NCBI RefSeq assembly: GCF_006345805.1
Contig: NW_021831988.1
Span: forward strand, 124,001 to 188,000
Source: Octopus sinensis
Lineage: Eukaryota
Length of the DNA stretch: 64,000 nt
Reading direction: 5' to 3'
In this document: piece by piece, positions 1 through 63,911 of the stretch
Layout: each line of letters starts with the position of its first letter
Position numbering within the stretch: position 1 is the stretch's first letter
Notes under the pieces: model-generated
What the model was told of the DNA's origin: nothing
What the model saw: the letters and a program-made list of their open reading frames with translations, nothing else
Databases searched by the model: none
Translations under genes and position numbers: made by a program

Positions 1-592
1 AGCGAATGTACTCGGAGGATTAAGACTGAGTTTCTTGTCCAATTTGTAAGTAGAATAGTCTTATTTGGCAAGGATGGGTTGGGAAATGACAGTAAAGAGA
101 TGATTTTGGTGATAGGGGCTACTAATAGGCAATTATTCGGATCTGACTTGATAGACCACAGGACTTGGATGAGGCTGCCCGTAGACGTTTTGTGCGACGA
201 ATGTATGTGCCCTTGCCCGATAGTCAGGACAGAATGGAATTGGTTTCAGTCCTTCTGAAGGACTATGACAATTCCTTGGACAATCAGGACCTTGAGGAGA
301 TTGCCCGACGTTCAGAATGTTGTGGTATTTGAGTTATTAGTAGACTTTTCTGCTTCGGATATTACTGCGTTGTGTCGTGAAGCAGCGCTGGAGCCACTAA
401 GAATGCTTTCGTCGGATCAAATAAGGAATACTTCTCGTGAAGAGGTATATGAGTAGGATTAGTTGGGAGATCAACCCGATCACTATTTCACATTTCAGAA
501 AGGCATTCCAGGACTCTCGGTCTTCAATTTGCGTTGAGAGTTTAGCTCAGTTTGAACAGTGGAATGAACGATTTGGCTCGTGCCACTCCTAA
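1..592 (+). CDS. FIGNL1: Fidgetin-like AAA+ ATPase, 3' part (partial; introns 46-72, 129-154 GC-AG, 319-343, 445-469)
   Basis: Spliced translation RRIKTEFLVQF-DG...[30 protein letters not shown]...FSASDITALCREAALEP...WNERFGSCHS* matches the spastin/fidgetin AAA C-terminus. RRIKTEFLVQ and EAARRR favour FIGNL1. Confidence 0.82.
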
Positions 593-1108
593 GATATGAA
601 TAGTTTTGTTTCTGACTGTTTTCAGTATTACAAATACAATTAAATTTTGCACTCGTACATATATTAAGCAATTTTTGTTTTTCTGCTGTTTTTCAGAACT
701 AATGAGGGCGCCGTGTGTGACTAGTGTTCAGTAAAAGGGTTTTAAAATGGCTTTTTGATTAAATATATGCATAACGAGTGCAGATGATTGCAATCTAAAT
801 TACTGTCTTTACTTCTTTTAGCAAAATGAACTGAGGTGTTAGTAATGGTCATAGACAGAAACGGCTCATTGTTCTGTGTATTCGTTCTATCTTATCAGTG
901 GAGGATCTAATTTATAATAAATTCATTAGATACTGTTTTTTTATTTCCATTAGTACCCATATTTGCTGCCGATAGCTGACAGAAATTAAGAAAATAAAGC
1001 TGATTTAGGTTTTTTAAACTACAGTATAACCCATTTAAACTCTGCTCTGGACCGACATTATTGACCGGTGTAGAAAAGAGGCAGCATAATGAACAAGTCA
1101 TTAAATTT

Positions 1109-1222
1109 ACTTATTACAAAAGAACGAAACATGAAAATTAATAAAAATCTTTCAATAAAGATTGCCCATATTTAACTTTGATGTAGCAATCGCTTATTGT
1201 TCGAACGAATTATCCTGTTTAT
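1109..1222 (+). repeat. Dispersed direct repeat, copy 1 (copy 2 at about 3990-4105)
   Basis: acttattacaaaagaacgaaacatgaaaattaataaaaatctttcaataaagattgccc aligns by eye with acttataacaaaagagtgaaacaggaaaattaataaaaatctctcaataaggattgccc. Confidence 0.7.
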
Positions 1223-1249
1223 GGGCAAGTGTTATTCAGAATTACTCTA

Positions 1250-1700
1250 GCTAATTAGAGAATCCGTTATTTTCCCAATATGAATATTTACATATTTTCT
1301 TTATCGGCATCAGTCTCATCCACAATTAAGCAAATCTTTTTATTAATTAACAAGCAGATTATCTCATCGATATGTCGTTCGGCCAAAATTTTGACATTAT
1401 TTCGACATTTGGATTCTGAATGTAACTCGAATTGCAGGATTCCTTAGTTTATATAAAGCAATATTTGTTGAAACAAATGCTTCAGTCAGATTTAGTTAAA
1501 AATCATTCGTATCAATAGTATTGGGAAGAAACGTTTGAATCGTCTTTTTGGATTCTTTTATATGTGAAATATGTTGTTGCGTAAATCTGTATTTTTAACA
1601 ACCGTTTCATATCGTATTTTACACAAATATCCCATAAATTATGATATAATGCTCCATTGGGGATAATCGAAAATTCATTTAGAAATTCTTGGATAAATCA
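1250..1700 (-). pseudogene. Decayed hAT-like transposase remnant
   Basis: 1459-1565 is the reverse-complement homolog of about 19036-19140, which translates as ...TEAFVSANI..., similar to the hAT-like family at 56450-57640 and 58544-61243. Confidence 0.4.
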
Positions 1701-1833
1701 TTCGAGTAGATAGATTTTTTCGACTTTGGAATCACAACAACAATCCAATAATTAAAAATATTAAATTTAATATTTTTACATATATATTTAAAATCTTTAA
1801 AATGAATAAACTACACGTTCTACAGTTGTTAGC

Positions 1834-2790
1834 ATGGTGGAAAATCGAAAACGCCTGTCATTTTTTCAAAAGAAGAAAATACTCGAATTTTATCATAAAA
1901 ATAGACATTACACACAGCGCGATTTATCCCTTTATTTCAATGTTTCTCTGGGCTGCATAAACAAAATTTTGAAAAATTCTGAAGGAATACTTAATGTTCA
2001 AGATGACCAAAAAAAGAAGAAAATTTACTTGCCCAAGTCTCAACCATTCGACAGAGATCTATTTGAATGGTTCGTTAAAAAACGATCATTTGGATTTACA
2101 ATCAATGAAAAATGGCCCATGTCTCTAAAAATGGCGAAAGTTTGTAATATTCAAGGATTTCAAGCATCAAATGGATGGCTTGAGAAATTTAAAAATCGAT
2201 ATTGCATTGCTTCCCGTGCTTTATGTGGGAAAATCAATTTGTTGAAACCTCTGTGATTGAAAATTTTACAGAAAGCTTTAATAGAAAATTAGAACAATAT
2301 TGTTTAAAAAATATTTTTAATTTGGACGAAACTGGATTGTTTTTTAAACTTTTGTCGAACAGAACATTAGCTGTTGACTCGGACAAAAATCTGCTTGATA
2401 TTCATAAATCAAGCTTGGTTAGAAGTGTCGGAATTAACAATTACAAATTGTTTCAAGAAAGCATTTGAAAATGCGTTAATACAGAACCTGACAGAAATAG
2501 ATGATGAAAATTTTTTGATTCATGAAAATGATCAAATTGACGACGAAAACTTTATACACAACTTTGCGAGAAAACTAAAACAGCAAGACCAAGTTGAAGA
2601 GGAAGATGAAAAAATTTATGTTCCGACACTATATGAAGCTAGTGAATATGCGAAGGCGCTTGAATTATGGTTTCTTGAGAATGATTATGAACAAAGAGGA
2701 AAAGTATACGAAATACAAAAAATTTTAAGAAATTGTCAAACTAATCATTCTCAAAAAATCACCGATTACATGATTAAAATCTCTAAATAA
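1834..2790 (+). pseudogene. Decayed pogo/Tigger transposase (CENP-B HTH plus DDE_1 remnants, frameshifted)
   Basis: Motifs RKRLSFFQKKKIL, FQASNGWLEKFKNRY, IFNLDETGLFFK and ITNCFKKA lie in three overlapping frames. Confidence 0.85.
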
Positions 2791-2854
2791 TCTTTGTAAT
2801 TATACTTTAATATTGTTTATTGTGTCGATGCGGAGAATGAAGAGCATAGAGTTA

Positions 2855-10346: not shown

Positions 10347-12043
10347 TTATAAAAAATTCTCCTCATCATGATTAGTAGAAAAATGTAAGTCTGCGAGAAA
10401 TTCGCTATCAGGACATAAATATTCAAAAATCTTTCTGGCCTCCAAAACCACATCATTCGGCCTCCTCAAAGGAGATGGACCAAGGCAAGGAAACACATTC
10501 CTCGGCAAACAATCAATCTCCCGACAGCAATCAACATCAAAATCCGCCCTCCACAACACAACCTGAATGTCCCCATAAAAGGAATCAATCAAATTGTCAA
10601 TATGAGTCCTAAACTCCTCTTCAACCCCGCCATGTGCAGTAAAGTGAACAACAACTTGAATTATATAAATAATTACAATATCCAGGAGGACATGTTCCAC
10701 TAGCATACGGCAATTCAAGGACAGTGATTGTACAATCCCCAGAAAATTCATGAAATAAAGTAATCTGAGAATTATCCCCCTCAGTCTTTATAGAAGTGTT
10801 GGTAAAAAGAATCGTCCTGTGGAATGTCTGACTGTTCTCTGCCCTCTGGCCAGTCGTGGATGACATATAAGAATCATTAATGAAAAAATATCTAAAATTT
10901 AATGACTGGAAAACCTGCATTTAATTTGTTCTTGGTTGGACAGAACTACACCAGAACAACTACGACTATATTATGCACAAAACCTGCCGGATTCGTCTTG
11001 GAGAAGACGTTCCACAGCCACAGACAGACAGCACGTGACCCCAAAGACTGCTCCATGTCTGGAAAATGCCTGCACAACATCTCCACATCCATACAGAGTA
11101 TACAAATAAGGAGACTTTCCATATGCCCCGGCCGACTTGATAAAACACAAAATCGCTTCCAAGCCCTAAAAAAGTCAAACAGTAAAAAAACCTCTTCCAT
11201 GGAAATTTGTCGGTTTTTGAGACAAAGTATAGAACAGATGTAGTCGACCAGCTTAGGGGTGAGTCCCTTAAGTCTCATTGTGTCGACAAACATGGAATCG
11301 GAGTTATCTTTTCTATAAATCACAATTTAGGCAACCTGCTGAATCAAAGATGTAATTCGAACAAAATTTAAAAAACTTATTGAGACTGTATTTTTCGACA
11401 TTTGTAAAATTTTTGGTAGAGAAAACCTCAGAACGAGAGCAGGGAGCCTTAGAAAATGTGACAAAATGACTTAACCGAATAAATATTTGATTTACTGTCT
11501 CGAATGAGTATTCGGTGGACAAGTTGAAAGGACAAATATTTATGGATTCCTGTCTTTATTATCTTTTCGATTAACGGACCGGACGCGTGGGTGACGTAGG
11601 GAAATAAATCCAACTGAAAGACACGCAATTTGGCCGACAATTCGGTAGGAATTTGAGAACTAAAATTCATCTTTTGAACAAACCATTCAAAGTTCCTAAA
11701 AACTACATTTTTATCAAATCTAAGATCTATCGAATTATCGTTATCAGTTCGTGGCTGAAATTGGTCCAGAACAGGCTAAAATGTACAGAAAATCGTACAT
11801 TCTGCATGAATGACTGAAACTCCTTAAATGAGAGAGTAGCCCACTGACTGCCATAAAAAGGATTTCTAAGTTAAATTCAAGTCGGAAAAACTTATCGATG
11901 AGGAGAACTGACATTCCGGCACGTTGTAGAGCAGAGGACAGAATAGTCTCAAATAGTCCTTCAAATCAGCACAAAGTCAACTCACCCGTGCCGTAGAACA
12001 CACAGTCAAAGTAATCCTGACCAATCCTAATGTCACTACACAT
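10347..12043 (-). CDS. CHM: Rab escort protein (Rab GGTase component A, GDI/REP family), multi-intron
   Basis: FDCVFYGT-GLFETILSSALQRAGMSVLLID-KNPFYGSQWA; FQLDLFP...KYLSFQ; APCSRSEVFSTKNFTNVEKYSLNKF; SAGAYGKSPYLYTLYGCGDVVQAFSRHGAVFG. Confidence 0.9.
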
Positions 12044-12123
12044 AAGGGAATTAAATAAGACAAATTAAAACAATAAAATTAATTCAAAGACAATAACTCA
12101 AAAAAAGAAAGTAATAGAACTAA

Positions 12124-13233: not shown

Positions 13234-15041
13234 ATGGTGGCACAAACTGTCAACTCTGCAAACCCTCCAAGCAAAAATGAAGCCAACACTCAATATGGCA
13301 ACAAAGACAAGCCAAAACAAATAAGAAACAGCAACATAGTGGCAGCCAAGGCTGTATGTGATGCAATCCGAACAAGTCTTGGTCCCCGAGGAATGGACAA
13401 AATGGTCCACCAACCCCTCTAATACTCAGATTGTGGGCGACAAAGGAAAAGTCTCCATCTCCAATGACGGGGCCACCATTTTAAAGGAAATGCGAGTCCT
13501 CCATCCTGCTGCCAGAATGCTGGTCGAACTCTCCCGAGCCCAGGACATCGAAGCAGGGGATGGGACAACCAGTGTAGTAGTCCTAGCCGGGACACTCCTT
13601 CAGGCCTGTACCCGTCTTCTAGAAGTCGGTCAGAACTTTAATAACCAGTCCTAGGAGTGTCCCCTTGGGAGATTTGTGAAGGCCTGAGATTATTCTCGTT
13701 GGAGTGTTGTCGAGTTTTGAGGAACATGGCTTCCCCAGTTGACATGACTGATCACAGAAAACTCCAAAATATAGCCTCCACTGCTCTCAACTCGAAAGTC
13801 GTGTCTCAATACTCCTCCGTTCTTTCTCCCCTCTGCGTCAACGCGGTTCTCCAGGTGAGGAGACCGGACAACAGTGTGGACCTGCAGGACATCAAGATCT
13901 TCACCAGACAGAGGTAATCCACGGCTAGCATTGACAGTGGGACGGTGGATGACAGTCAGTTATTCCACGGACTGATATTCCCCAGGATTAGTTCGACTGA
14001 CGTGCCTAAGAAAATGGCCAAAGTGGCTTTAATTCAGTACTGTTTGTCTCCCCCCAAATCTGACGTTGGTTGTATGGCTGAATATGCAGATGGAATTCAC
14101 TGTCAATGTGTCGGACTATACTCAAATAGACCGAGCGTTTAGACAGGAACAGGCTTATATTCTGGAGAGGGTCAAAGCTATCAAGGCAGCTGGAGTTGAT
14201 CTGCTTTTGATCCAGAAATCTATATTGAGGGACGCCACCAACTCGATGGCTCTTCATTTCCTTAAGAAATTCAATATTAGAGTGGTGCGTGACATTGAGA
14301 GGACAGATGTGGAGATTATATGTAAAGTATGTATATATGTGGACAATTCAGGCGTTCGGATGTAGACCCATTGCCAGTCCTGATCATCTTTTGCCTCAGA
14401 ATCTGGGAATATCTCCACTTATAGAGGAAACGATGGTGGGGGACAGTAAAGTGTTGAAGGTCTGTTTTTTGTGCTGAATTGGCAGGCTGCTGCCCAGACT
14501 GGTGCACACGTGACCAGCATTCTTTTGAGGGGGTCGAATGAGATGGTTTTGGAGGAGGCTGAACGGTCTGTGCACGACGCCTTGTGTGTGATTCGTTGTT
14601 TGGTTAAGGAGAGGTAGTTGGGGGTGTTGAGGGTAGTTTTGTGGTGGCAGGAGGGGGAGCCACTGAAATTGAGTTGTCGCTGGCATTGAGTCGATATGCC
14701 TTGGGACTGAGTGGGAGTCGGCAGATGTGTGTGTCGGCCTTTGCGGAGTCGTTGGAGTTGATTCCGTACACGTTGGCGGAGAATGCAGGTCTACAGCCGA
14801 TATCGACGGTGACGAAACTGCGGAATGCCCACAGTGAGAAGGGAGGGGAGCAGATGGGGATTGATGTTGGGAAGGGATTGGTTGGTTGTATGATCCAGGC
14901 CAATGTGATTCAGCCACTCACAGTCAATACTAGTGCTATTACATTTGCCTGTGAGACTGTGTCTAACATCATGAAGATTGATGATGTGGTTGTCTGCTTT
15001 TGTCACATTGTCTGTAGATTATCACACAGGGCAGATATTAG
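13234..15041 (+). CDS. CCT4: Chaperonin CCT/TRiC subunit delta, about 8 tiny introns
   Basis: [52 protein letters not shown]; AGDGTTSVV; [20 protein letters not shown]; MKIDDVV. Confidence 0.97.
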
Positions 15042-17584
15042 TCACTCTGGTTGTTCGGTTCATGATTTCTTGTTATTTTTGTACGTATTGTCTGTAGGGA
15101 GTAGTGTATAGTCTTGCTAGTGATTTTGATTAGTTGGGAAGTAAGCAATTTGTCGCATTTGTGTTTTATGATTTGTTGTTTCGATTATGAGTTTGAACAA
15201 ATTTGCTGAACTTGTTTTCAAAATTGTTATGTGAGATTTAATGCAGAAAAATCGAACCTAATTCAAGGGAATAAAATATTTTTTTGTCCGTAGTAATTTA
15301 AACTGAGCCATTCTTCAGTCGGGACCATTTTGGTTTTATCAAATTTTAGTAGAAGCTTCTGGTAGGGAGCTGTTCTGATAAGAATAATAGTTATCAAAAT
15401 GTATGGAAGTATTACAGTAATTATATGACCTGGAGAATGAAATATTTCCCTCACTCCACGAATCCTTGTAAAGAGCTGAATTTTTAAGTTTGTTTCATTT
15501 ACTAAGGAACTTCCAACCAGTTTAAACAATCATGTTTTCAAAATTAGTTTATTTTTAATTCACTCATGAGATAACTATTAGGAAATCACATTGACTAATA
15601 AAGAATTACTTCATTCTATGTTATCTATGATATTTATTATTTAGATATACAGTGTTAATTTCCAGATGAGCTATTTATATTTAAATTGGATTTTCAATTT
15701 ACTTAAAATTTGAGTTGGTAACTACAGTCGAGAAACTTGATGAATTTTACGATCTTATTAAACCAATCAATAATAATACTTTCAAAAATTTTATACTTTC
15801 ACAAATTTATACATTGAATAACCCCAACAATTTTGTTTGTGGCGGAGGATTCTAATACATGTTAATTTTTAATTTAAGGCATAAATTTAAATTAAAAACT
15901 ATAAATTACTATTTATTAGAATTAGTCATCATTTTTAAAAAAAACAGAAATTATTAAAATGAGTCATTAATTTTTTTCATAAAAAATTGATTTAGTGAAT
16001 AGATTTATTAAATTATATTAAAATATCGTATAAGTATCTCTCATTTTTTAAAAAGGAAGACTTTTATTGTTTCACATTATTATTAATTGCACATTCGCAA
16101 CAACAAGAAAAAAAAACTTTTCGTCGCTTGTGTCACACCTTGAAAGATTTTGTCTATTTTTGTCTGTTAGACACCTATTTTGCGGAGGCTGTCTACATCT
16201 GTATTTTCTAGTGGCAATCAGACATGCTTGAGGTCGTTATTTAAGATTAGTGGTAGTGTGGCCTGCCTCAAAAAATCCCAGAGCATTGAAAGTGTGTTTC
16301 CATGATATCATTGAAAGTATGTGCCAAAGAGTCCCCATTGGCTCTTAGTGATAGTTGCATCTAATTGTTCTGCTTGAAAACGGAGTATAGATCTTGGTTC
16401 TTGTTTCACAATAAGTGTGTAGAACAAGAAAATTAAAGATGATAGAAACACTAAAACTATTAAAAACAATCCATTCTAAAAATTGATTATTTTGAAAATT
16501 AGTAATTACATTTTTCGAATTATCATCACTCATTAGTATAATTACTTTAAATTTCTATAAAACGAGTTTTTTCGTAAAAAATAAAATCGCGAATGTTGGA
16601 ATATTTCAAAAACCTAATAAAAACCTTATCAACATACAAGAAATCAATTCGAATAGCAAATTTAATATCAAGCATAATATTAACAGTAAAAATTGAATTA
16701 TATTCGCAGACAATGAGCCTCACTCTTTTGGGATGCAGCATTCGATATTCCATTAATAACCTCCCTCTAATCATTATCCGAGACACACAAAGCATTCGGG
16801 AAATATCTATTTTGGGGATATTTACTGTCATCCTTTTTTGTATGGCACTCACTGACTGGTTGGCTGTCGTCTATAACTGGCAATTCATCATGAAAATTGT
16901 AATTAATTTTTCTTTATTTTTAGTTTTTGCTATTTTTCTTGTTATCGGCTGTGATATTTCCATGTATTTATTTCACAATTAGCACTCATTCCAAAGTGAT
17001 TTCAAAAATAAGTGAGACTTTTCACTGGGTTTTTGAATGAGAAAATACATTTGCTTACAAATTTATTATTATTTTTTTATTATGAACATAAATAAAAATT
17101 TATTCTTGTACTTTGTTTGTACTAGCTTAAAGACAAAATAGGACTCCATAAAACTATTTAAATATTTGAATAAATTTTAATGTTTCTAATTTAAAAAATT
17201 TATTTGAAAAACAAATGTTGATTTAAAAAGTTTCTAGTGATGAAGGCGTGTTTTTTATTTTCTCAGAACACGCAAATTCTGACAGCATTTTTTGAGTTTG
17301 AGTAAACCACAAAAATATCCATCATTTACTAGATATAATTACTTCGATTTTAAATGGTCAGAAAACACACTAATTCTAAAAATAGTCAATAACCCAATAA
17401 ACCGGCCTCTAGTCAAAAAATTCAACATGAAAAATGCAAAAATGTTACCCAACAGTTGTCACGATCTAACAACAACCAAAGTGAATATATATTTTAAATA
17501 TATTTATTAAAATTAAATTACAAAAAATATTAAAAATCCAATTATTAATAATAGAAAGGATTCTCATTAAAATTTATGGTCGAA

Positions 17585-24338: not shown

Positions 24339-24545
24339 TTTCCTTTTGACAAAATCGTTTTAATTAAAAAAATTTACACCGTAAAAAATTTTGTTGACTT
24401 TATAAAGGTCAAAGTCAAAGTGGTTATAGATATCAATTCAATCTGGACTATTTCTATCTCGCAGACTGGGTCATTACAAATATATTAAAAACAATGATTG
24501 AAAAACAAGAAAAGTATGTATTAGGAAAACCAAGAATAACTAACA

Positions 24546-25985: not shown

Positions 25986-26053
25986 AACCACACCACAAGA
26001 CGACACGATTAAATAATACTATTTTTTACAACTTATTTTTATAAACAACAAAA

Positions 26054-29186: not shown

Positions 29187-29311
29187 TGTACAATTTTAAA
29201 AATTTTATTTATTATTTTTAAGTGTACTTATATTAATAAATTCTACCAAAGTTTAATTAAAATATCAAATAAAAGTTTACGTTTATTGTGAAATAAAATT
29301 TGTTAAAATAT

Positions 29312-34227: not shown

Positions 34228-35057
34228 TTTGATTGTATATTCATTATAATATTTAACACGTGGTTTCCTATTACTTTTGGTGAGGAATTATTAGTCCATT
34301 CTCTTCCTATAATTAGGCAAGTACTTTTCTTGGCTCACTTAAATTTTCCGAATTTCAATATTGGTTTTCAAAAACATGAATTTAATATTTGTCTAAAATG
34401 ATCTAACAAATTTGATTTAATCCAAACAAAGGATGTTTTGATGAGAATTAGTAAATTTGGTCATTGCGTATTGTTTACATGTAATATCAAACATAATCTA
34501 TGAAAATTACAAATGTTAGTAATTTGTGGCACCGGGTGTTCATTAATGTGCCACATCCCACAAGGTGACCCCAAATATTGCGATAGGTCAAATAAAAGAC
34601 ACTATTCTTGTGTTCCTAAGACAATCTAATATTTTTTGTATACTCAAAAGCCTTTTAATCATTAAATATATTGGAAAACACAATGGTAGCATCATGTCAG
34701 AGTGATTTATTTGTTTCCCTAGATGACCTATTTTTGATTTCCCAGAAATATTTTTTTACTTTGCTTAATCCATATTATTTAAAGTTCTGATCGATCAAGT
34801 ATGTCATTTCCAATTTAAACTCTCTTTTATGCGCATTATTTCATTTAATGCATAAATCGACGCTTTCCGATCACATCGAATAACTCACCTCGTTCCGCTT
34901 GTCATTTCATTGAGAAGACAACTCAAAATAAACCTAAAAACACCACAAAATATCTCCCCTGACCATTTAATAGCACTAAATAGGACACTAATGAATAAAT
35001 GAACAACAATCATCAGTAACGGATATTAGAATGATAATATGAGAAAGTTAAACTGGG

Positions 35058-44170: not shown

Positions 44171-44368
44171 CATATTTCTATCTAAAAAGGAATTTAATTT
44201 TTGAATTCATTTTATTCTAAAATATGAAACTCATTGGTAAAATAATACTCTGAATGGTTAAAAAAGACGATTTCTTACATATTTCCTATTTTGTACACTT
44301 TTTTCCTCAATTTCAATTTTGGAAACATTAATGTCAAATATATAGCGATTTTCTGCGCTGAATAGAAA

Positions 44369-45037
44369 ATGAACCGAGATCCTATTACTATTAAATGTGT
44401 AGTCGTCGGGGACGGGGGAGTAGGCAAAACATGTCTCATGATAACATATGCATATGGACAATACCCAGAGTCCTATGTCCCAACAGTTGAGTCATTCAAA
44501 TGTTAAATTTAGGTCTTTGATAATTACTCTGTGAATGTGTCTGTCAATTCCCAGGATGTCAATTTATGCATATTCGACACTGCGGGACAAGAGGAATATT
44601 CCTACATTCGAGCTCTCGCCTACAAAAACACGGACATTTTTATAATAACATTTTCTGTTGTTATACCTGCATCGTTCGATAACGTCAAATCATATGTTTT
44701 GCTTAAATATAATTATTTTAGTGGGTTCCGGAAATTAGAAAGAATTATGGATCGAATAGTTTGTGCATTTTGGTTGGGACTCAAGTCGACCTGCGAGAAG
44801 ACGCTTATATTAAAGAACAGCTAAGATTGAGATATCAGTCCCCCATAACCAGAGAACAAGGAATGGCCTTAGCCAGAGAACTGAATATGCAACACTATTT
44901 CGACACTTCGTCTTTTAAATTTGTATTTTGATGATTTTACAGTTTAGTATAATATTCGGGAATTAATGAATCAAGTTATTAAAAGCGTTTTAATTCAGAG
45001 AACGATCAAAGCTAAAAAGAAGTGTACGCTTTTATAG
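44369..45037 (+). CDS. Rho-family small GTPase, Cdc42/RhoQ-like, 3 tiny introns
   Basis: [16 protein letters not shown]...YVPT-VFDNY...FDTAGQEEY...[11 protein letters not shown]...KKKCTLL* (CAAX). Confidence 0.92.
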
Positions 45038-48692: not shown

Positions 48693-49140
48693 ATTCATTA
48701 AATTACCTTCTACTTTTCTTTTATGCTTTATTTAAAATATGGATTTTATAGTCATCAGTAAATAACCTTTGATTCAACCGAAACATGCTCAGTTGTGCAT
48801 TTGAATTAATATAAAGCAGCATAATACGCCTAGGCATAGTTTAAATTGAATCTTTATTTTTTATTCTCAAGTAGCATCTAGGATTTCTTCCTGATCTGCC
48901 TGATTAATAATGTTTAATTCATTTAGTAATTTTCCGAATCCCTCTATTTCACAGGAAAAATCATCAATAATTCCACTCTGTTTTATTCCAGCAATTGTTA
49001 AGTCTTGCAAGAAATGTCACTCTAAGCATATGATGTAAAGATTACTGCATTTTTTACATTAATCTGTTTAAATAGCGATTCAGCATGTGTTTGGGAATCA
49101 ATTTTGTTTACAACATGTACTCAAATTTGTTGCAACTGTG

Positions 49141-50955
49141 ATGGACAGGTGGAACGTCCATCTAAATTACAACAAAAGAGAGGGGCATATTACAGGGCGA
49201 CAGCATGTCTCCGCTGCTGTTCGTCCTCTGCCTAGAACCGCTGAGTAGAGTCCTCACTGCCCAATTCGAACAAATGTCGATCGAACATGAAGGAGGGTGT
49301 TTTAGCACCAACCATCTCATGTTCATAGACGACATTAAGCTGTTCGCTCGGTCTTCAGAGATCCTTCACTCAATGGGTAAAGTCCTGAAAGGTTTCATGA
49401 AGGCCGTGGGGTTGGAGCTCAACTACAACAAGTCGGCGACTAACACCCCTGTGTGTGGTGACCTAGTCAAAGTCTTGGAGGAACACCAAGGATATAAGTA
49501 TCTTGGTGTGGTTGAGAGTCCAGCCTCATTAATCACACCCGAAACGAGAAAGTGTGTAGTGGAGGGTGTGCGTAGTAGGGCGGCAATGTTATGTAAGACT
49601 CGGCTCAATGCACGGAACTTATTTCATGCCTTGAACGAGTATGCCATCTCATTGCTAAACTACTACGTTGGCCTGATCGAATTCGAGCCGAGTGAGTACG
49701 ATGAAATGGACCTTATTGTCCGAAGAGTACTCCGAGAGAATCATGTCCACGTGTTGGCAAGCAATAAGGAGAGATTGTACTTGTCTCGCGGGCAGCTAGG
49801 ACGTGGACTGAGTAACATCGTACACTTAAGTGAGCGAATTCTTACTAAGATGCACGACACCTTGTGGAGTGGGTCGAGTGTATCCCAAAGGAAGGCTGCC
49901 ATCCTTGCTGCTGAAAAAGCGCGTGGTACACACCTAGGGACCATAAAAGGCTATGTGTCGGCTAAGTATGGTCTAGGTGCTACCCAAGTTAATGTGAAGG
50001 AGTTGATCAAACTTCAAAAGGAGTCTTTAATTAAAAAGATCAACTTAAAAGTCCTTCACAAGACTCTCTTTAGCAGCCTGGACAACCCGCACATTGACGT
50101 ATCGTCGTCATCTACGTGGCTGAAATATGGGAATAACTCTCCCCGATCAGAAGGGTTGTTCTCATATTTGCAGGATAGAAACTTTTTTAATGGTCAACGG
50201 AAACAGTGTAACCACTGTAAGAGTAAGGCAATGACCGTTGACCATTTAGCCACGAAGTGCGGGAGTATGCTTTACCATGATTACACATGGAGGCATAACG
50301 AGGTGGTGAGGTCCCTCCATCTTTTGCTCTGCAACAAGTATGCCTTGAGGCGGTCCAGAAAGTTGCGAACCCATCGAGTTCAATCGGTGTGTGAGAACTC
50401 GCGGGTGTGCATTAAGGTGGATACCCCCATACGCACCTCGATTGTTGTCCAGCACAACAGACCCGACATTGTGGTCCACGATAAGGTCACCGGGGAGATT
50501 GTTATCGTGGAGGTGGGCATCACGTGCCTAGACCGTTTGCAGATAGTGGAAGTGGAGAAAAGGAGGAAGTATGACCTCCTTGCAAACGAGCTAGGACTGA
50601 TGCACCAGTGCAAAGTCCATGTCATCCCGTGTGTGATGACATGGGATGGACTGGTCACCAAATACCACAAGCGGTACTTAAGACAGTTGGATGTAGATAA
50701 GTCTCTACAGGCTTATATACAGTCAACTGTTCTTAAGAGGACTCTGGAGAGTGTCTCGTTTGATGCTCGCCGATCCAGCCCTTTCCTGACGTTTAGTCAG
50801 CAAGAGGCGCTGGACTGCACCTTCTCGAAGGTCTACAGTGCCAGAGAAGAGGAGGAAGAAGGGGAGGAGGTGCGTGGAGTGCCGCCTTCTGCTCACTTCG
50901 AAGGCTCTGGACTTAGTTAGTAAAATTACTTAGTTAATTAGTTTCTTTCTTAATA
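49141..50955 (+). mobile_element. R4/Dong-like non-LTR retrotransposon, 5'-truncated, uninterrupted 571-aa RT-C/CCHC/restriction-like endonuclease ORF (49205-50920)
   Basis: QGDSMSPLLF, MFIDDIKL, YKYLG, RLYLSRGQLGRGL, CNHC...HLATKC...RHNEV and RPDIVV...E...K..KY. Confidence 0.93.
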
Positions 50956-51322
50956 AATGTTTACAACATGTAAGAGTTGGTAATGATAATATCGAGACTT
51001 GAAGCACCCTATATAAGCCTGAAAAAGCGGTAAAAATAGAAAAATGGTAAAAAAAATTAAAAAATGTCAAATTTTTAGGTAAAAAATGAGAGTGGCAAAT
51101 CATAGAGGAAGTAAATTAGAGAAGTTTGACTGTATAAAGTACGTGTATTTAAACATAAAAAATTCTTATAATTTTCACCAACCCAGCCATATTTATAAAA
51201 TTTAACTTATATTCAATTGTTTTAAAAATATATTTATCGTCAATAAATTGTTATACCAATTGTGTCCATTGTGGTTCCATATTGTATACATTCATTAATC
51301 CACATTAAAAATTATTTTAGAG

Positions 51323-52991
51323 ATGTCATCTGACATAAGAAACAATATCTCTCTAGTAGCTGCAGAGGCAGATTACAACGAAACCCAGCAGGCATTCTCT
51401 GCTGGCCAGGCAGAGCTCCTTGCAGAGTTTGAATTTAAAAAGAAGGTCTCCCATCCCCCAATATCCACATAGGCTCGCCAAATCCACGTCTCCACCGACG
51501 ACAGTGACGTAAAGTACCAACTAAGGAGACTCCAGGAACCAATAAGTAATCCATATATATAACCTCCAGTCTTGTTCGGGGAGGACGCGGCCGATCGAAG
51601 AGACCGTCTTCGTCTCCTCCTCGCCAAACACAGCGATGATATTTTCAAGATCCCCGGAGCCCCCAACCAAAGGGAGACCCAGGAAATGCAGGAATTGGAA
51701 CAAATTGTGTGGTATCACGAGGGGACGGAGGAATTGACCAAGGCCAGGCTGTGGATTGCCGAGTACTCAATTCCGAGGGCTGTCCAGAGATTGAAGAGCT
51801 GTGTGGAGCAGAAGGGTCTTCCCAACACTCAAAAAAATGCACACATTCAGGAAACTCACAAAAAAATATCGGTTAGTATGGTTAACCTAATTAAATAAAA
51901 TTTTTTTTCGATAGCGCGAAATTTAGAATATTTCTAGTGGATGCAGTCAAATGGCGGATTCTCGGCCGATTTCATGCTGCAATTTCAGTCCGAATGATCA
52001 AATGTTAGTCACAGGGTCTTGGTTAGTGCGAATATAGTAATTCATACAGGACAGGCACCTGTAAACTGTGGAGTGTCCCCAATTGTGATTTGATTAGAAC
52101 CTTAACTGGTAAGAACAGTCTTTAATTGTAGGACACAAGGATTCTGTCAGTTCAGTAGCATTTCATCCGAATGCGAGGGAAATTGAGAGTGAAGAGAGCG
52201 AAGGATCCCTCATGTTGGCCACGAGTGCCTTCGATGGGTCAGTCAAGTTGTGGGATTCGTCAAGTGACAAGGCAGTGGCTGATTTGGAGGGACATGCCCC
52301 CTACAGAGTGGGAGGACTGGGATGGCACCCCTCTGGTCTATTTCTGGCCACATGTTGGTGAGGATGTGGATTAACCCCAGTTATGACTGTTCGTGGAGAT
52401 TGTTTGATTTAGAAGAGAGTGTGGAAGTACTCCACCAAGAAGGGCATGTGCGGGCAGTGCATTGTGTGTCCTTCCAGTGTGATGGGTCACTCGTGGTCAC
52501 TGGGAGTCTGGACGAAACAGCGAGGGTGTGGGATTTGAGGACAGGGAGATGTGTCCTTCTCCTGAAGGGGCATCAAGGACCTGTTCTCTCCGTAGACTAT
52601 TCTCCCAGTGGGTATGAGTAGGGATATATGCAGATATATACTGGCCACAGGGAGTAGTGATAATACGTGCAAGATATGGGACTTGAGGCAACGGGCCTGT
52701 GTGTATACAATAGCCGCCCACACCAACAATGTGTCCTCTGTTAAGTTCCAGAGTGAGTTGTGTGTGATTAGTGTGATAGAGGGACATAATTATAGTGCTC
52801 ACTTTTTGGTGACGGGGTCGTATGACAAGACAGTCAAGATATGGACACATCCATTGTGGACTCCTTTAAAGACGTTGGAGGGACATATGGATAAGATTAC
52901 TTCCTTGGACGTCGATGTGGCTGGGGAGACTATTGTCACTACTAGTTTTGACAGGACTGTTCGGATTTGGAATTCACAAACACTCATGTGA
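51323..52991 (+). CDS. PRPF4: U4/U6 snRNP protein Prp4 (WD40), multi-intron
   Basis: [22 protein letters not shown]...[14 protein letters not shown]; WYHEG; [13 protein letters not shown]; WD repeats with HQEGH and VWDLRTGRC. Confidence 0.95.
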
Positions 52992-61590: not shown

Positions 61591-61827
61591 AAAACTTTTT
61601 TGATATGAGTGACAATTTTAATAACATCGGCAAGAACATTTTTAAGTTCCTAGAAGCATTGTTGACAGCAAGAGCATAGCAATGCAACATTGAATGAAGA
61701 TGTTTTACATTTACTTTGATATATTGTACCTTACCTCGGAAACCAGAGTTACATTCAATGCGATTCGGAAAAAAAATTCACAGTTACATGTTTGAAAATT
61801 TTATTTATAAATTGTGAGCATATTTTC

Positions 61828-63297
61828 ATGTCGATAGTTGTTAGTTCACTCTAATTTTCTTTTTCTTGATAAAGTGTTTATTTTATATTGAAAGAATAGA
61901 ATTATTTGACCCATTTATAACGTTATCATTCTGCAATATGCTTGCACTGATTTTATCAATTTTGTTAATTAATTCAATGATCTCAGCAACTGATGAAAAA
62001 AAACAAGAAAAAACAACAAAGGCAAACATCAATTCAAGTACAAAAACCTCACAAAAAACAACTACTAATAAAAAAGTTACTAATCAAACAAAAAACACTA
62101 AAACTCCCAAAATTACAACTTCGACGCATAAAATGACGACAGCTGCCCCACATGCCAAAACGACAATTGCCACACAGGTTAAAAATAATTCTAAAAAAGT
62201 TATTGGAATAATTGCCGGTGTTCTCGCAATAATATGTGTATTTGGATTAATCTACTATTTCATTCACCGAAAAACGAAGAAGAATAATTACGGGGAACTC
62301 AATCGCTTATTATAATCGTTATCAGTAACTAATAAGACTAATTTTAATTATTCGTTTATTGGTATTTTTTGATTTCATTTTTTCTTGTGGTGTGTTTCAC
62401 CCGAGCACTACCATTACCGATGGATCTATCTACGAAGTCTCTTGAAAGACAAATTAGTAATAATGTAGACGGTGATTCGGCTTTTTTGCTTTTAGCGATT
62501 CGATGTGAAATCATGTAAGAGATTTTTGATAATATAAAATTGAGGTCAAAATTGAATGAATCATCTATTTGTCAAATATTTTTTTGTTCTTAAAAAATCG
62601 GTTTTCTGATATTTTCGTGATTATTAGGAACTTAATACTGCAAAAGTAATGAAGGCTTCATGTATTTAGGTGAAAGAATTTTGTGACAGATAATACACTG
62701 CGGATGTTCACAATGTTTTTATTCACTGAAAATCTCGAATTCCTCGTCACACGCTTTTAGAAGTTGGAGGTCAATGTTTCCTTTTCTTGTTGAAGAATGT
62801 CCTTCATTCCAAATTTAATTTTTTTAGGAGGACGTTTTAAAAAAGGACACTGCGAGGACAATAATTTTAAATCAACTTCTCAACTTGGGCGCCACAAATA
62901 GTCTGTACACTCAGAAAATTGTTGCTCGAATATTTAAGTCAAAAGAACGGAATTTGATTCATAGCCAAAGCTTGAATGGTTTAATAAATCACAACATAAA
63001 CCGAGATTAGAAGCATCATATGCTGTAATTTTAATTTATACTTGAACAAATAGGTCTCAATGATTATTGCAAAAAACAAAGCTGCACATAATTCTGGGGG
63101 AAAGTTAATTAACCCTGCGGGTCTTGAAATGTTAATTACTTTCCTGTTGAAGACACAATTCCAACCTCAACCTTTCTTTACTTTATTTAAAGAATATCAG
63201 GAACTCAATTTTCACCAAGGCTCTTGATTGGACTTCAATCTAATTAGAATGTTTTCAAATGTGCTTAATTATTAAATTTTTGACATTCTCATTAATG
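61828..63297. repeat. Inverted segmental duplication, copy 2
   Basis: Reverse complement of 40595-42133. Confidence 0.93.
61938..62315 (+). CDS. Small type I membrane mucin-like protein, copy 2
   Basis: Same ORF as 41579-41956 with three visible substitutions. Confidence 0.75.
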   Translation: MLALILSILLINSMISATDEKKQEKTTKANINSSTKTSQKTTTNKKVTNQTKNTKTPKITTSTHKMTTAAPHAKTTIATQVKNNSKKVIGIIAGVLAIICVFGLIYYFIHRKTKKNNYGELNRLL

Positions 63298-63299
63298 TT

Positions 63300-63675
63300 T
63301 TATTGATAAAAAAGAAACTAATTAACTAAGTAATTTTTCTAACTACGTCCAGAGCCTTAGAAGTAAGCAGAGGATGGCACTCCACACATCTCCTCCCCTT
63401 CTTCCCCCTCTTCTCTGGCACGGTAGACCTCCGAGAAGGTGTAGTCCGGCGCCTCTCGCTGACTAAATGTCAGGAAAAGGCTGGATCGGCGAGCATCAAA
63501 CGAGACACTCTCCAGAGTTTTCTTAAGAACAGTTGACTGTATATAATCCCGTAGAGACTTATCTACACCCAACTGTCTTAAGTACCGCTTGTGGTATTTG
63601 ATGACCAGTCCATCCCATCAGGGAATGACATGGACTTTGCACTGGTGCATCAATCCTAGCTCGTTTACAAGGATT
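63300..63675 (-). mobile_element. R4-like 3' fragment
   Basis: Reverse-complement match to 50578-50950, including the 3' UTR. Confidence 0.88.
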
Positions 63676-63689
63676 AAAGAAAAATCAGA

Positions 63690-63911
63690 GACTCACGGAA
63701 AATGCCGCCAGCAAAATCGTTGAAAAAAGTATGATTTTATCAAATCCATCTCGATCTACAAGATTAAAAAAATTAATACATTTCTGTCTCCTATCTTTAT
63801 GTTTTGTTGTTTTTCTAGAGTCTGCTGCAAGCAAGACTCCTCTGCGGTATTGTATTGCTATAATCGTAGTTCCACTCTTAAATTAATTACAAGTTGAAAA
63901 TAAACATCCAT
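63690..63911 (-). pseudogene. 5' part of a divergent catalytic-type proteasome beta subunit (PSMB6/beta1-like), broken by R4 sequence
   Basis: MD-SGTTIIAIQYRRGVLLAADSRKTT...-DKI with 29-nt (63877-63905) and 24-nt introns. Matches the Ntn motif GTTIxAxxYxxGVxLxADSR. Confidence 0.62.

What the first reader, a model, noticed from the sequence alone, without database searches (positions are those of the whole stretch)
46..63905. Tiny-intron splicing system: 22-30 nt introns with no visible branch point or polypyrimidine tract and relaxed NAG acceptors
Dozens of introns inferred from conserved protein alignments fall at 21-31 nt. Their interiors simply follow local skew: a pure G/T tract in gtagttgggggtgttgagggtag and a C/A tract in gtccaccaacccctctaatactcag. 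Acceptors include GAG (445-469; a SPO11 intron) and AAG (46-72). This suggests definition mainly by terminal dinucleotides plus a length ruler, and implies a modified spliceosome; PRPF4 in this window is one component to inspect. Introns this small are reported for dicyemids and a few protists or nucleomorphs and are far below typical animal minima.
Basis: partly seen in the sequence, partly recalled or inferred. Interest (0 to 1): 0.7.

Follow-up and report, generated by a model that had tools for sequence, protein, structure and literature searches.

The report
Dicyemid-type 25-nt spliceosomal introns
The window is a piece of a dicyemid-type parasite genome (kidney parasites of octopus) whose genes carry real but extremely short introns of about 25 bases, a striking feature that has already been published for dicyemids, so the finding is genuine but not new.

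Summary
The tiny introns are real. Spliced protein-to-DNA alignment of ten conserved genes gave 58 homology-supported introns. Their median length is 25 nt and 56 of 58 are 21-30 nt. Donors are 55 GT and 3 GC, and all acceptors are AG. Fifty-five of the 58 cannot be read through, because of a frameshift or an in-frame stop.

- Acceptors are relaxed but not free: 84% are YAG, 5 are AAG and 4 are GAG.
- Interiors are U-rich and C-poor on the sense strand in every gene, so they do not simply follow local skew.
- A weak branch-point-like signal exists. An A sits 17-18 nt from the 5' end in 43 of 56 introns (24 expected), with U two bases upstream.
- There is no polypyrimidine tract.
- PRPF4 is ordinary.

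A LINE copy in the window is 99.3% identical to a scaffold deposited as Octopus sinensis. That scaffold also holds a gene (IFT88) with 16 tiny introns. CCT4 is only about 55% identical to mollusc CCT4. The DNA is therefore most likely from a dicyemid, not from the octopus.

Ultra-short dicyemid introns, their reduced splice signals and the shifting A residues are already published (Aruga 2007, Ogino 2010, Lu 2019, Zverkov 2019, Hadjez 2026). Verdict: already known.

The parts
1..592 (+). 3' part of a fidgetin-like-1 (AAA ATPase) gene, cut by the window start; 4 introns
   Evidence: Gapless alignment of residues 1-157 to human FIGNL1 3d8b_A, E=6.6e-42, running across all four junctions. Spliced alignment.
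46..72 (+). intron, 27 nt, GT..AAG (FIGNL1-like); 3n with no in-frame stop
   Evidence: The donor is GTAAGT and there is an A at +18. Splicing is inferred from homology only.
129..154 (+). intron, 26 nt, GC..TAG (FIGNL1-like)
   Evidence: No in-frame GT alternative exists. Flank scores are 37/45.
319..343 (+). intron, 25 nt, GT..TAG (FIGNL1-like)
445..469 (+). intron, 25 nt, GT..GAG (FIGNL1-like)
   Evidence: It shifts the frame. The internal TAG acceptors give the wrong frame.
10350..12050 (-). Rab escort protein (REP/GDI family) gene, approximate span
   Evidence: PDB 1ltx_R, E=1.2e-23. Spliced alignment.
11959..11985 (-). intron, 27 nt, GT..AAG (REP)
   Evidence: flank scores 23/24; carries an in-frame stop
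11448..11475 (-). intron, 28 nt, GT..AAG (REP)
   Evidence: The downstream flank is strong (39) and the upstream flank is weak.
11166..11191 (-). intron, 26 nt, GT..TAG (REP)
   Evidence: moderate support
13264..15111 (+). CCT4 (TCP-1 delta) gene; 7 confirmed introns
   Evidence: Homologues are at most 56% identical. Spliced alignments.
   Evidence: It contains CTAAT with A at +17/+18.
13629..13654 (+). intron, 26 nt, GT..TAG (CCT4)
13914..13937 (+). intron, 24 nt, GT..CAG (CCT4)
14065..14089 (+). intron, 25 nt, GT..CAG (CCT4)
   Evidence: Same position and phase as an 86-nt intron in another animal's CCT4 (L003).
14327..14351 (+). intron, 25 nt, GT..CAG (CCT4)
   Evidence: The position is shared with L003.
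14460..14485 (+). intron, 26 nt, GT..CAG (CCT4)
   Evidence: The position is shared with L003.
   Evidence: Its only interior A is at +17. The position and phase are shared with L003.
24400..26000 (-). PSMD3/RPN3 proteasome lid subunit gene, approximate span
   Evidence: PDB 5vfp_V, E=3e-58. Spliced alignments.
25133..25159 (-). intron, 27 nt, GT..AAG (PSMD3)
   Evidence: flank scores 30/27; carries an in-frame stop
24995..25017 (-). intron, 23 nt, GT..CAG (PSMD3)
24754..24779 (-). intron, 26 nt, GT..CAG (PSMD3)
26030..27250 (-). SPO11 gene, approximate span
   Evidence: 31% identical to Biomphalaria SPO11-like over 100% of the model, E=4e-35. Topo VI-A/Spo11 PDB hits.
26974..26998 (-). intron, 25 nt, GT..CAG (SPO11), just before the RDIYY catalytic motif
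   Evidence: gapless KILKI...|RDIYY. offers a 46-nt alternative donor.
26839..26864 (-). intron, 26 nt, GT..TAG (SPO11)
26731..26757 (-). intron, 27 nt, GT..TAG (SPO11)
   Evidence: carries an in-frame stop
26670..26693 (-). intron, 24 nt, GT..CAG (SPO11)
   Evidence: in-frame TAG
26528..26553 (-). intron, 26 nt, GT..TAG (SPO11)
26404..26427 (-). intron, 24 nt, GT..GAG (SPO11), inside the DADPHG|VEI motif
   Evidence: flank scores 45/22; carries in-frame stops
26171..26191 (-). intron, 21 nt, GT..TAG (SPO11); the shortest in the set
   Evidence: in-frame TAG
29260..32000 (-). anoctamin (TMEM16) gene, approximate span
   Evidence: PDB 7b5d_A anoctamin-1, E=8.6e-80. Spliced alignments.
31783..31808 (-). 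intron, 26 nt, GT..CAG (ANO)
31147..31176 (-). intron, 30 nt, GT..TAG (ANO)
30854..30879 (-). intron, 26 nt, GT..GAG (ANO)
   Evidence: flank scores 22/30
30381..30405 (-). intron, 25 nt, GT..CAG (ANO)
30244..30268 (-). intron, 25 nt, GT..TAG (ANO)
29903..29926 (-). intron, 24 nt, GT..CAG (ANO); 3n with no in-frame stop
   Evidence: flank scores 29/32
29677..29702 (-). intron, 26 nt, GT..CAG (ANO)
32690..34246 (+). SERINC (serine incorporator) gene
   Evidence: PDB 7ru6_A SERINC3, E=1.8e-68. Spliced alignments.
32921..32943 (+). intron, 23 nt, GT..CAG (SERINC)
33212..33237 (+). intron, 26 nt, GT..CAG (SERINC)
33459..33486 (+). intron, 28 nt, GT..TAG (SERINC)
33581..33602 (+). intron, 22 nt, GT..TAG (SERINC)
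33690..33712 (+). intron, 23 nt, GT..AAG (SERINC)
   Evidence: flank scores 31/31
33834..33856 (+). intron, 23 nt, GT..TAG (SERINC)
34064..34088 (+). intron, 25 nt, GT..TAG (SERINC)
44330..45010 (+). Rac/Rho-family small GTPase gene
   Evidence: PDB 1ds6_A Rac2, E=6.4e-44. Spliced alignment.
44486..44512 (+). intron, 27 nt, GT..TAG (Rac)
44696..44721 (+). intron, 26 nt, GT..TAG (Rac)
44923..44947 (+). intron, 25 nt, GT..TAG (Rac), placed by hand
   Evidence: It gives a gapless 23-residue match to the Rac2 C-terminal helix. The aligner preferred a 76-nt gap.
45830..48700 (+). eIF5B gene; 10 confirmed introns in the conserved GTPase and C-terminal part
   Evidence: PDB 7tql_1, E=3.8e-209. Spliced alignments.
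46728..46753 (+). intron, 26 nt, GT..CAG (eIF5B)
46865..46894 (+). intron, 30 nt, GT..TAG (eIF5B)
46963..46987 (+). intron, 25 nt, GT..TAG (eIF5B)
47130..47154 (+). intron, 25 nt, GT..TAG (eIF5B)
47287..47310 (+). intron, 24 nt, GC..TAG (eIF5B)
   Evidence: It was also found with no dinucleotide preference. It carries an in-frame TAG.
47494..47516 (+). intron, 23 nt, GT..GAG (eIF5B)
   Evidence: flank scores 25/34
47679..47705 (+). intron, 27 nt, GT..TAG (eIF5B)
47838..47861 (+). intron, 24 nt, GT..TAG (eIF5B)
47994..48021 (+). intron, 28 nt, GT..CAG (eIF5B)
48559..48584 (+). intron, 26 nt, GC..TAG (eIF5B)
   Evidence: The internal GT alternatives would leave a TGA in frame.
51300..52990 (+). 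PRPF4 (U4/U6 snRNP Prp4, WD40) gene
   Evidence: PDB 3jcr_L human Prp4, E=3.2e-123, residues 113-520. Spliced alignments.
51546..51569 (+). intron, 24 nt, GT..CAG (PRPF4)
51872..51926 (+). intron, 55 nt, GT..TAG (PRPF4); the longest in the set
52022..52049 (+). intron, 28 nt, GT..CAG (PRPF4)
52109..52131 (+). intron, 23 nt, GT..TAG (PRPF4)
52358..52380 (+). intron, 23 nt, GT..CAG (PRPF4)
52612..52633 (+). intron, 22 nt, GT..CAG (PRPF4)
52760..52795 (+). probable intron, 36 nt, GT..TAG (PRPF4); 3n with no in-frame stop, so it could be a retained 12-residue loop insertion
49178..50957 (+). 5'-truncated LINE copy (reverse-transcriptase ORF 49205-50920) that ties the window to scaffolds deposited as Octopus sinensis
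   Evidence: 99.3% identical over 1781 bp to VCDQ01007963.1. Its cluster holds 18 RefSeq models on unplaced scaffolds.

Best explanation
The window is nuclear DNA of a dicyemid-type mesozoan: Dicyema japonicum or a close relative, kidney parasites of Octopus sinensis. Its protein-coding genes are interrupted by ordinary U2-type GT(GC)-AG spliceosomal introns that have shrunk to near the physical minimum, about 25 +/- 2 nt.

Inferred mechanism of recognition:
- A weak 5' site, (A)G|GT(W)(A)(G)(U).
- A branch adenosine in a yUnAy-like context about 17-18 nt from the 5' end.
- A U-rich, C-poor interior.
- The first AG at least 21 nt from the 5' splice site, preferably YAG.

The tight length window supplies most of the specificity that a polypyrimidine tract and strong consensus sites supply in other animals. 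Shown here: the existence of the introns, their boundaries, lengths, composition and positional signals. Inferred, or taken from the literature: removal at the RNA level, the branch site, and the organism.
For: Introns:
- 58 introns restore conserved reading frames in ten genes: FIGNL1, REP, CCT4, PSMD3, SPO11, anoctamin, SERINC, Rac, eIF5B and PRPF4 (for homology; 17, 33, 41-43 for spliced alignments; 49 for the list).
- GT..AG emerges without being asked for: 30/40 gaps against at most 11 for any other pair.
- 55/58 would break the reading frame if retained.
- Four CCT4 introns sit at the same positions and phases as the 76-88 nt introns of another animal's CCT4.

Signals:
- -3 is a pyrimidine in 84% (p=6e-7).
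- A at -7..-9 in 62/168 positions (p=2e-4), shifting away from the 3' end in longer introns.
- A at +17/18 in 43/56 against 24 expected, with U at -2 in 36/55 against 23.5.
- The 3' site is the first AG giving a length of at least 21 nt in 53/56.
- The weak signals add about 3.5 bits, against about 3.6 bits still needed after the GT, AG and length filter.

Organism:
- CCT4 is at most 56% identical to any database protein; many of the best named hits are molluscs and other spiralians, alongside arthropods, echinoderms and others at similar identity.
- The LINE copy is 99.3% identical to an 'Octopus sinensis' scaffold. That scaffold holds an IFT88 gene with 16 introns of 23-29 nt.
- D. japonicum was isolated from O. 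sinensis. Its genome has 36.7% GC, 49% repeats, 6.2 introns per gene and a mean intron of 38 bp (PMC6736024).
- Among 51 animals surveyed, only dicyemids and myxobolid myxozoans have such introns (PMC13644364).

Spliceosome: PRPF4 is conventional.
Against:
- No dicyemid reference sequence was reachable with the tools, so the organism is inferred. Exact look-ups of window ORFs found no record.
- Three 3n introns without in-frame stops (46-72, 29903-29926, 52760-52795) could in principle be retained insertions.
- A leave-one-gene-out model of all measured signals ranks only 25 of 40 true introns in the top 40, so recognition is not fully explained.
- Full position-specific models gave no cross-validated gain with n=56. 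The branch-A result therefore rests on targeted tests. The window -10..-6 and the positions +17/18 were chosen after looking at the position tables.
Confidence: 0.88

Rival explanations
1. The same tiny introns, but from a different ultra-short-intron lineage: a myxobolid myxozoan, or an undescribed parasite or protist.
For: Myxobolids have median intron lengths of 22-27 nt and similarly reduced splice signals (PMC13644364). No dicyemid reference could be compared directly. The CCT4 identities are similar across many animal phyla.
Against: - The LINE copy is 99.3% identical to scaffolds in an octopus assembly. Those scaffolds also carry tiny-intron genes. Dicyemids live in octopus kidneys; myxozoans infect fish and annelids.
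- GC content, repeat load and intron statistics match D. japonicum (PMC6736024).
- No in-frame stop codon occurs in the several thousand aligned codons, including the TAA/TAG that Paramecium-type ciliates read as glutamine.
- The genes are typical animal genes.
Confidence: 0.06
2. The introns are recognised by a substantially remodelled spliceosome. There would be no U2AF/SF1-type 3' recognition, only a pure length ruler between GT and AG.
For: There is no polypyrimidine tract. The 5' and 3' consensus sequences are weak. 16% of acceptors are purine-AG and 5% of donors are GC. Lengths are very tightly distributed (sd 1.9 nt). The 3' site follows the first-AG rule. The literature states that recognition is unsolved (PMC13644364).
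Against: - A branch-like A with U at -2 and a preference for YAG are present.
- GT, AG and length alone leave an 11-fold excess of decoys.
- PRPF4 is conventional.
- In myxozoans with equally short introns, U2 snRNA and U2AF1/2 are conserved (PMC13644364).
- Nothing in this window bears on U2AF, SF1 or U2.
Confidence: 0.15
3. The segments are not introns. They would be assembly indels, translated insertions, programmed frameshift sites, or DNA-level eliminated sequences.
For: Three 3n segments lack in-frame stops.
Against: - All 58 segments are bounded by GT/GC..AG.
- They have a narrow length distribution and a distinct U-rich composition.
- 55 of 58 break the reading frame.
- Their positions are conserved with ordinary introns in another animal.
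- cDNA-versus-genome comparisons in dicyemids show that such segments are spliced (PMC2222250; Ogino 2010 as cited in PMC6543705).
Confidence: 0.02

Closest known systems
Ultra-short spliceosomal introns of Dicyemida (Aruga 2007, PMC2222250; Ogino 2010, Gene 449:70; Lu 2019, PMC6736024; Zverkov 2019, PMC6543705; Hadjez 2026, PMC13644364)
   Same: - The length matches. Here the mean is 25.3 +/- 1.9 nt and the median 25. Published values are 26.2 +/- 1.9 nt, a median of 27 nt, and two thirds of introns under 30 nt.
- A tail of longer introns is present.
- Intron positions are conserved.
- The 5' and 3' consensus sequences are reduced and there is no polypyrimidine tract.
- Weakly conserved A residues lie further from the AG in longer introns.
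- The host link to Octopus sinensis fits.
   Different: - Nothing differs in kind.
- In this small sample, +3 is T at least as often as A (the published logo is 'GTa').
- -3 still prefers a pyrimidine (84%), whereas the published logo is described as 'AG' only.
- 5% of donors are GC.
Ultra-short introns of myxobolid myxozoans (Henneguya, Thelohanellus, Myxobolus; PMC13644364)
   Same: Median 22-27 nt, reduced splice signals, weak A residues upstream of the AG, and a parasitic animal with a compact genome.
   Different: Those are cnidarian parasites of fish and annelids. This window is tied to octopus-assembly scaffolds, and many of its best protein matches are spiralian.
Ciliate tiny introns (Paramecium 20-35 nt, Stentor 15-16 nt) and Bigelowiella nucleomorph introns (18-21 nt)
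   Same: Near-minimal, tightly distributed lengths. There is a hint that 3n introns carry in-frame stops (14/17 against 10.1 expected), as reported for Paramecium (this comparison is from my own knowledge).
   Different: The genetic code here is standard. The gene set is metazoan (SERINC, anoctamin, PRPF4, SPO11, IFT88 nearby) and the transposons are animal-type.
Canonical metazoan U2-type introns
   Same: GT/GC-AG ends, a remnant of AG|GTRAGT, a yUnAy-like branch context, a preference for YAG, conserved positions and phases, and a conserved PRPF4.
   Different: Length is 2-3 fold below the usual animal minimum. There is no polypyrimidine tract. The 5' splice site to branch distance is only about 17 nt.

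Membership tests
U2-type (major) spliceosomal introns | GT or GC at the 5' end and AG at the 3' end | tested here: met
   55 GT and 3 GC donors, 58 AG acceptors. GT..AG is recovered without any preference.
U2-type (major) spliceosomal introns | Removal restores a conserved open reading frame; retention would disrupt it | tested here: met
   There are gapless or near-gapless alignments across junctions in ten genes. 55/58 introns shift the frame or carry an in-frame stop.
U2-type (major) spliceosomal introns | Branch-point adenosine upstream of the 3' splice site in a yUnAy-like context | tested here: inconclusive
   The statistical signal is clear. A at +17/18 in 43/56 against 24 expected. A at -10..-6 in 55/56. 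U at -2 in 36/55 against 23.5 expected. The branch itself was not mapped.
U2-type (major) spliceosomal introns | Polypyrimidine tract between the branch point and the AG | tested here: not met
   Only positions -6/-5 are U-enriched (59/112, p=0.047). Pyrimidines are about 54% at -12..-4 against 52% for the whole interior. This feature is typical of metazoans but is not required in all eukaryotes.
U2-type (major) spliceosomal introns | Excision from pre-mRNA as a lariat | not testable with these tools
   No RNA-seq or lariat data are available here. cDNA-versus-genome evidence exists for dicyemids (PMC2222250).
U2-type (major) spliceosomal introns | Positions and phases shared with orthologous genes of other animals | tested here: met
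   All four introns of an unrelated animal CCT4 (L003, 76-88 nt) coincide with window introns 14065, 14327, 14460 and 14614.
Dicyemid ultra-short introns | Narrow length distribution centred on 25-27 nt, with a minority of longer introns | tested here: met
   Median 25, 56/58 within 21-30 nt, outliers at 36 and 55 nt. Published values: 26.2 +/- 1.9 nt and a median of 27 nt (PMC2222250, PMC6543705).
Dicyemid ultra-short introns | Reduced splice-site logos, and A residues whose distance from the AG grows with intron length | tested here: met
   (peak at -7/-8 for 21-24 nt introns, -8/-9 for 26 nt, -10 for 27-31 nt). Matches the description in PMC13644364.
Dicyemid ultra-short introns | The sequence belongs to a dicyemid genome | tested here: inconclusive
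   The evidence is indirect. The window shares a 99.3% identical LINE with 'Octopus sinensis' scaffolds that also carry tiny-intron genes. CCT4 is divergent and not close to mollusc CCT4. No dicyemid reference was reachable.
U12-type (minor) introns | Highly conserved /RTATCCTT 5' site and TCCTTAAC branch box | tested here: not met
   Positions +3 to +8 carry less than 0.3 bit each, and no such motif appears in the 58 sequences.
Ciliate tiny introns | A ciliate host genome (reassigned stop codons in Paramecium-type ciliates, protist gene set) | tested here: not met
   There are no in-frame TAA/TAG in the aligned coding sequences. The FIGNL1-like gene ends at TAA straight after the conserved C-terminus. 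The best hits are metazoan.

The most novel reading that the evidence does not exclude
The dicyemid spliceosome may work as a true molecular ruler. The branch A would be fixed 17-18 nt from the 5' splice site, and the 3' site would simply be the first AG at least about 4 nt further on. No polypyrimidine or U2AF65-type recognition would be needed, which would explain the tolerance for GAG/AAG acceptors and GC donors. That would mean a mechanistically re-tuned early spliceosome in an animal. The positional pattern is already noted in the literature, but the mechanism has not been tested.
Probability: 0.2. Interest if true: 0.55.

Novelty: already known. Interest (0 to 1): 0.25.

Why it matters
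Introns of about 25 nt are 2-3 fold below the usual animal minimum, so they probe the least sequence and spacing a spliceosome needs. That makes the phenomenon interesting in itself. But it has been described for dicyemids since 2007-2010. A 2026 paper analysed the same splice-site logos, the missing polypyrimidine tract and the shifting A residues genome-wide.

What this window adds is small:
- A local replication of the published pattern.
- An information budget showing that the weak signals plus the length window are roughly sufficient.
- 5% GC-AG donors.
- A 'first AG at 21 nt or more' rule.

The practical by-product may matter more. Scaffolds and RefSeq proteins filed under Octopus sinensis appear to be dicyemid parasite DNA. 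Standard gene predictors cannot model such introns, so those protein models are unreliable.

Tried and rejected
1. A naive test asked whether GT..AG segments bridge two open frames, compared with control dinucleotide pairs. It showed no length peak, because any two neighbouring open frames can be bridged in many ways. Uninformative.
2. ORF chaining through any GT/GC..AG of 18-45 nt over-predicts heavily and runs through transposons and intergenic DNA. It was used only to draft queries.
3. An Rfam and tRNA scan looked for snRNAs to inspect and found none in the window.
4. Aligner output with no splice constraint, or a weak one, produced artefactual 12-17 nt or 40-100 nt 'introns' in poorly conserved N-termini (PSMD3, SPO11, anoctamin, SERINC). 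These were excluded. Only junctions with good flanks were kept.
5. PDB templates were too distant for SPO11, so database homologues were used instead.
With the last CCT4 exon it found no near-identical protein, so the organism's own proteins are not in that library. Its best hit turned out to be an unrelated ordinary animal, which was useful only for comparing intron positions.
7. Exact look-ups of three window ORFs found no record, so the window's own accession could not be established.
8. Cross-validated full position-specific models anchored at the 5' or the 3' end gave no gain over background with 56 introns. The question of which end the signal is anchored to rests on the length-class table.
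9. The carbonic-anhydrase-like (about 38.9-39.9 kb) and PABPN1-like (about 12.1-12.9 kb) genes, and the N-terminal halves of several genes, were not curated.

Full report
**What the window is.**
The 64 kb are eukaryotic, about 35% G+C. No tRNA and no Rfam family are present. About half of the window is transposon debris:
- a LINE reverse-transcriptase ORF at 49205-50920 and degraded copies of it;
- pogo/Tigger transposases;
- a hAT-like element;
- integrase fragments.

Between these lie compact animal genes, here paired with the solved structures or database proteins that identify them:

| Gene | Best match | E-value |
|---|---|---|
| fidgetin-like AAA ATPase | 3d8b_A | 6.6e-42 |
| Rab escort protein | 1ltx_R | 1.2e-23 |
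| CCT4 | database homologues | – |
| PSMD3 | 5vfp_V | 3e-58 |
| SPO11 | Biomphalaria SPO11-like | 4e-35 |
| anoctamin | 7b5d_A | 8.6e-80 |
| SERINC | 7ru6_A | 1.8e-68 |
| Rac-type GTPase | 1ds6_A | 6.4e-44 |
| eIF5B | 7tql_1 | 3.8e-209 |
| PRPF4 | 3jcr_L | 3.2e-123 |

**Checking the observation.**
I wrote a protein-to-DNA spliced aligner. I first ran it with no preference for any terminal dinucleotide.
- In six genes it opened 40 gaps, almost all of 20-31 nt.
- In 30 of them a GT..AG pair of the same length lies within 4 nt. The best other dinucleotide pair reaches 11, and that pair is only the GT..AG frame shifted by one base.

I then restricted introns to GT/GC..AG and kept only junctions with good flanking alignment. 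This gave 58 curated introns.
- The median is 25 nt. 56 of 58 are 21-30 nt (mean 25.3, sd 1.9). The outliers are 36 and 55 nt.
- 41 lengths are not multiples of three. 14 of the 17 3n introns contain an in-frame stop. So 55 of 58 must be removed to make the conserved protein.
- The fidgetin-like protein aligns to human FIGNL1 without a single gap across its four junctions.
- Four CCT4 introns lie at exactly the positions and phases of the 76-88 nt introns in the CCT4 gene of an unrelated small animal, found on a metagenome scaffold.

The cited acceptors are confirmed: AAG at 46-72, GAG at 445-469, and GAG in SPO11 at 26404-26427. One correction: 445-469 is in the AAA ATPase gene, not in SPO11.

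- *Acceptors.* There are 28 TAG, 21 CAG, 5 AAG and 4 GAG. Sixteen percent purine at -3 is high for an animal. But -3 is still a pyrimidine in 47/56 introns, against 52% pyrimidine in interiors (p=6e-7).
- *Donors.* Three are GC (129-154, 47287-47310, 48559-48584). Each follows an exon-terminal AG, and none has an in-frame GT alternative.
- *Composition.* Interiors are 41% T and 11% C; flanking exons are 29% T and 20% C. The bias lies on the sense strand in all ten genes, whichever DNA strand they occupy. Interiors therefore have their own U-rich, C-poor character. They follow the local T/A skew only weakly (rho 0.35) and show no significant link to local G/C skew (rho 0.20, p=0.13).
- *Branch point.* A is enriched at -9..-7 (62/168; p=2e-4 against the best window of shuffled interiors) and depleted at -5. 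55/56 introns have an A at -10..-6, against 41.4 expected. Counted from the 5' end, the peak is at +17/+18: 43/56 have an A there, against 24.0 expected. That A has U two bases upstream in 36/55 cases against 23.5 expected, which is the core of the metazoan yUnAy branch consensus. The peak moves from -7/-8 in 21-24 nt introns to -10 in 27-31 nt introns.
- *Polypyrimidine tract.* None is present. Only positions -6/-5 are modestly U-enriched.

**How recognition probably works.**
- In seven fully resolved genes, GT, AG and a 20-31 nt window leave 455 decoys for 40 true introns. The terminal dinucleotides plus a ruler are therefore not enough by themselves.
- The shortfall is log2(495/40) = 3.6 bits. 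The weak extras add about 3.5 bits: 5' positions other than GT 1.1 bits, 3' positions other than AG 1.6 bits, and the shape of the length distribution 0.8 bits.
- A leave-one-gene-out model reaches AUC 0.94. It places only 25 of 40 true introns in the top 40.
- The 3' site is the first AG giving a length of at least 21 nt in 53/56 introns.
- This fits a conventional U2-type pathway working at minimal spacing. It does not call for a new mechanism, but it does not exclude a re-tuned one.
- PRPF4, the one spliceosomal protein in the window, is conventional: it aligns with human PRPF4 across residues 113-520 at E=3e-123.

**Whose genome is it.**
- CCT4 is at most 56% identical to anything in a 5.8-billion-protein collection. 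Many of the best named hits are molluscs and other spiralians, alongside arthropods, echinoderms and others at similar identity. It is therefore a very fast-evolving animal lineage, and not a mollusc.
- The LINE ORF matches RefSeq 'Octopus sinensis' proteins at 99%. At the DNA level it is 99.3% identical over 1781 bp to scaffold VCDQ01007963.1 of GCA_006345805.1.
- The 90% protein cluster holds 18 such models; the 15 that were listed are all on unplaced scaffolds of 8.7 kb to 1.29 Mb.
- That same octopus-labelled scaffold encodes an IFT88 that matches 8bd7_A at E=8e-98, but only after 16 GT..AG segments of 23-29 nt are removed.
- Dicyemids live in octopus kidneys, and Dicyema japonicum was collected from O. 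sinensis. Its genome is 36.7% GC and 49% repeats, with 6.2 introns per gene and a mean intron of 38 bp (PMC6736024).
- The window is therefore most probably dicyemid DNA. Whether it comes from the D. japonicum assembly or from parasite scaffolds inside the octopus assembly could not be settled.

**Comparison with what is known.**
- Aruga 2007 reported 26.2 +/- 1.9 nt for 16 Dicyema introns at conserved positions (PMC2222250).
- Ogino 2010 extended this to 40 genes. Zverkov 2019 gave a median of 27 nt, with two thirds of introns under 30 nt (PMC6543705).
- Hadjez 2026 compared 51 animals and found such introns only in myxobolid myxozoans and D. japonicum. For D. japonicum they described a 5' site reduced to GTa, a 3' site reduced to AG, a missing or very short polypyrimidine tract, and 2-3 weakly conserved A residues that lie further from the AG in longer introns. 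They concluded that recognition remains to be worked out (PMC13644364).
No paper in the library addresses the dicyemid spliceosome itself.

**Verdict.**
The finding is real, well beyond chance and biologically striking, but already known. It is partly wrong on three points: acceptors are not free NAG, a branch-like signal is present, and nothing here indicates a modified spliceosome. Interest is low to moderate. The open mechanistic question belongs to the published literature, not to this window.

Noticed in passing
window 49178-50957; L001 (VCDQ01007963.1) 15599-18290 and 18837-19696; L002 (VCDQ01000492.1): Scaffolds and RefSeq proteins filed under Octopus sinensis (GCA_006345805.1) appear to be dicyemid parasite DNA. 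The LINE copy is 99.3% identical to one of them. Its cluster holds 18 'uncharacterized protein LOC1152xxxxx' models; the 15 listed are all on unplaced scaffolds of 8.7 kb-1.29 Mb. L001 holds an IFT88 gene with 16 introns of 23-29 nt (E=8e-98 to 8bd7_A) and a gene that looks like TSR3 by eye (not searched), with 5 tiny introns. No paper in the library reports this contamination.
   Followed up: partly
window 129-154, 47287-47310, 48559-48584: Three of the 58 introns (5%) use GC donors. Each is preceded by an exon-terminal AG and has no in-frame GT alternative. This is several-fold above the roughly 1% usual in animals (that figure is from my own knowledge).
   Followed up: partly
window 40595-42048 and 61846-63296: An inverted duplication, 97.1% identical over 1456 bp. 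It carries a small ORF for a Ser/Thr/Lys-rich single-pass membrane protein. A 180-bp repeat at 39404-39583 / 40362-40541 (97.8%) duplicates part of the carbonic-anhydrase-like region.
   Followed up: no
window, the 17 introns whose length is a multiple of three: 3n introns are not depleted (17/58). But 14 of the 17 carry an in-frame stop, against 10.1 expected from shuffled interiors (p=0.03). This hints at selection for nonsense-mediated surveillance of retained introns, as described for Paramecium.
   Followed up: partly
L003 (ENA ERZ19050664, GROS21-1_SAMEA9560858 scaffold_683) 2413-4624: An unrelated animal CCT4, highly similar to mollusc CCT4, has four introns of 76-88 nt. They sit at exactly the positions and phases of window introns 14065, 14327, 14460 and 14614. 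The window gene has three further introns upstream that this gene lacks.
   Followed up: partly
window 1834-2790 (+), 53655-55319 (-), 59854-60570 (+), 58400-59400 (-), 20900-21400 (+), 22780-23659 (-), 7882-8713 (-): There is a heavy transposon load: one apparently intact pogo/Tigger transposase and two fragments, a hAT-like transposase, two integrase-bearing retroelement fragments, and a degraded second LINE copy. This agrees with the 49% repeat content reported for D. japonicum.
   Followed up: no
window ~63800-63999 (-): The N-terminus of a proteasome beta-type subunit (GTTIIAIQYRRGVLLAADSR...) is cut by the window end.
   Followed up: no
window ~38900-39900 (+) and ~12100-12900 (-): By eye there is a divergent alpha-carbonic-anhydrase-like gene and a PABPN1-like RRM gene. 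Neither was searched against any database, and their introns were not curated.
   Followed up: no
window 15008-15111 (+): The CCT4 reading frame runs about 35 codons past the conserved C-terminal KIDDVV motif before its stop. There may be one more tiny intron and a short terminal exon that were not resolved.
   Followed up: no
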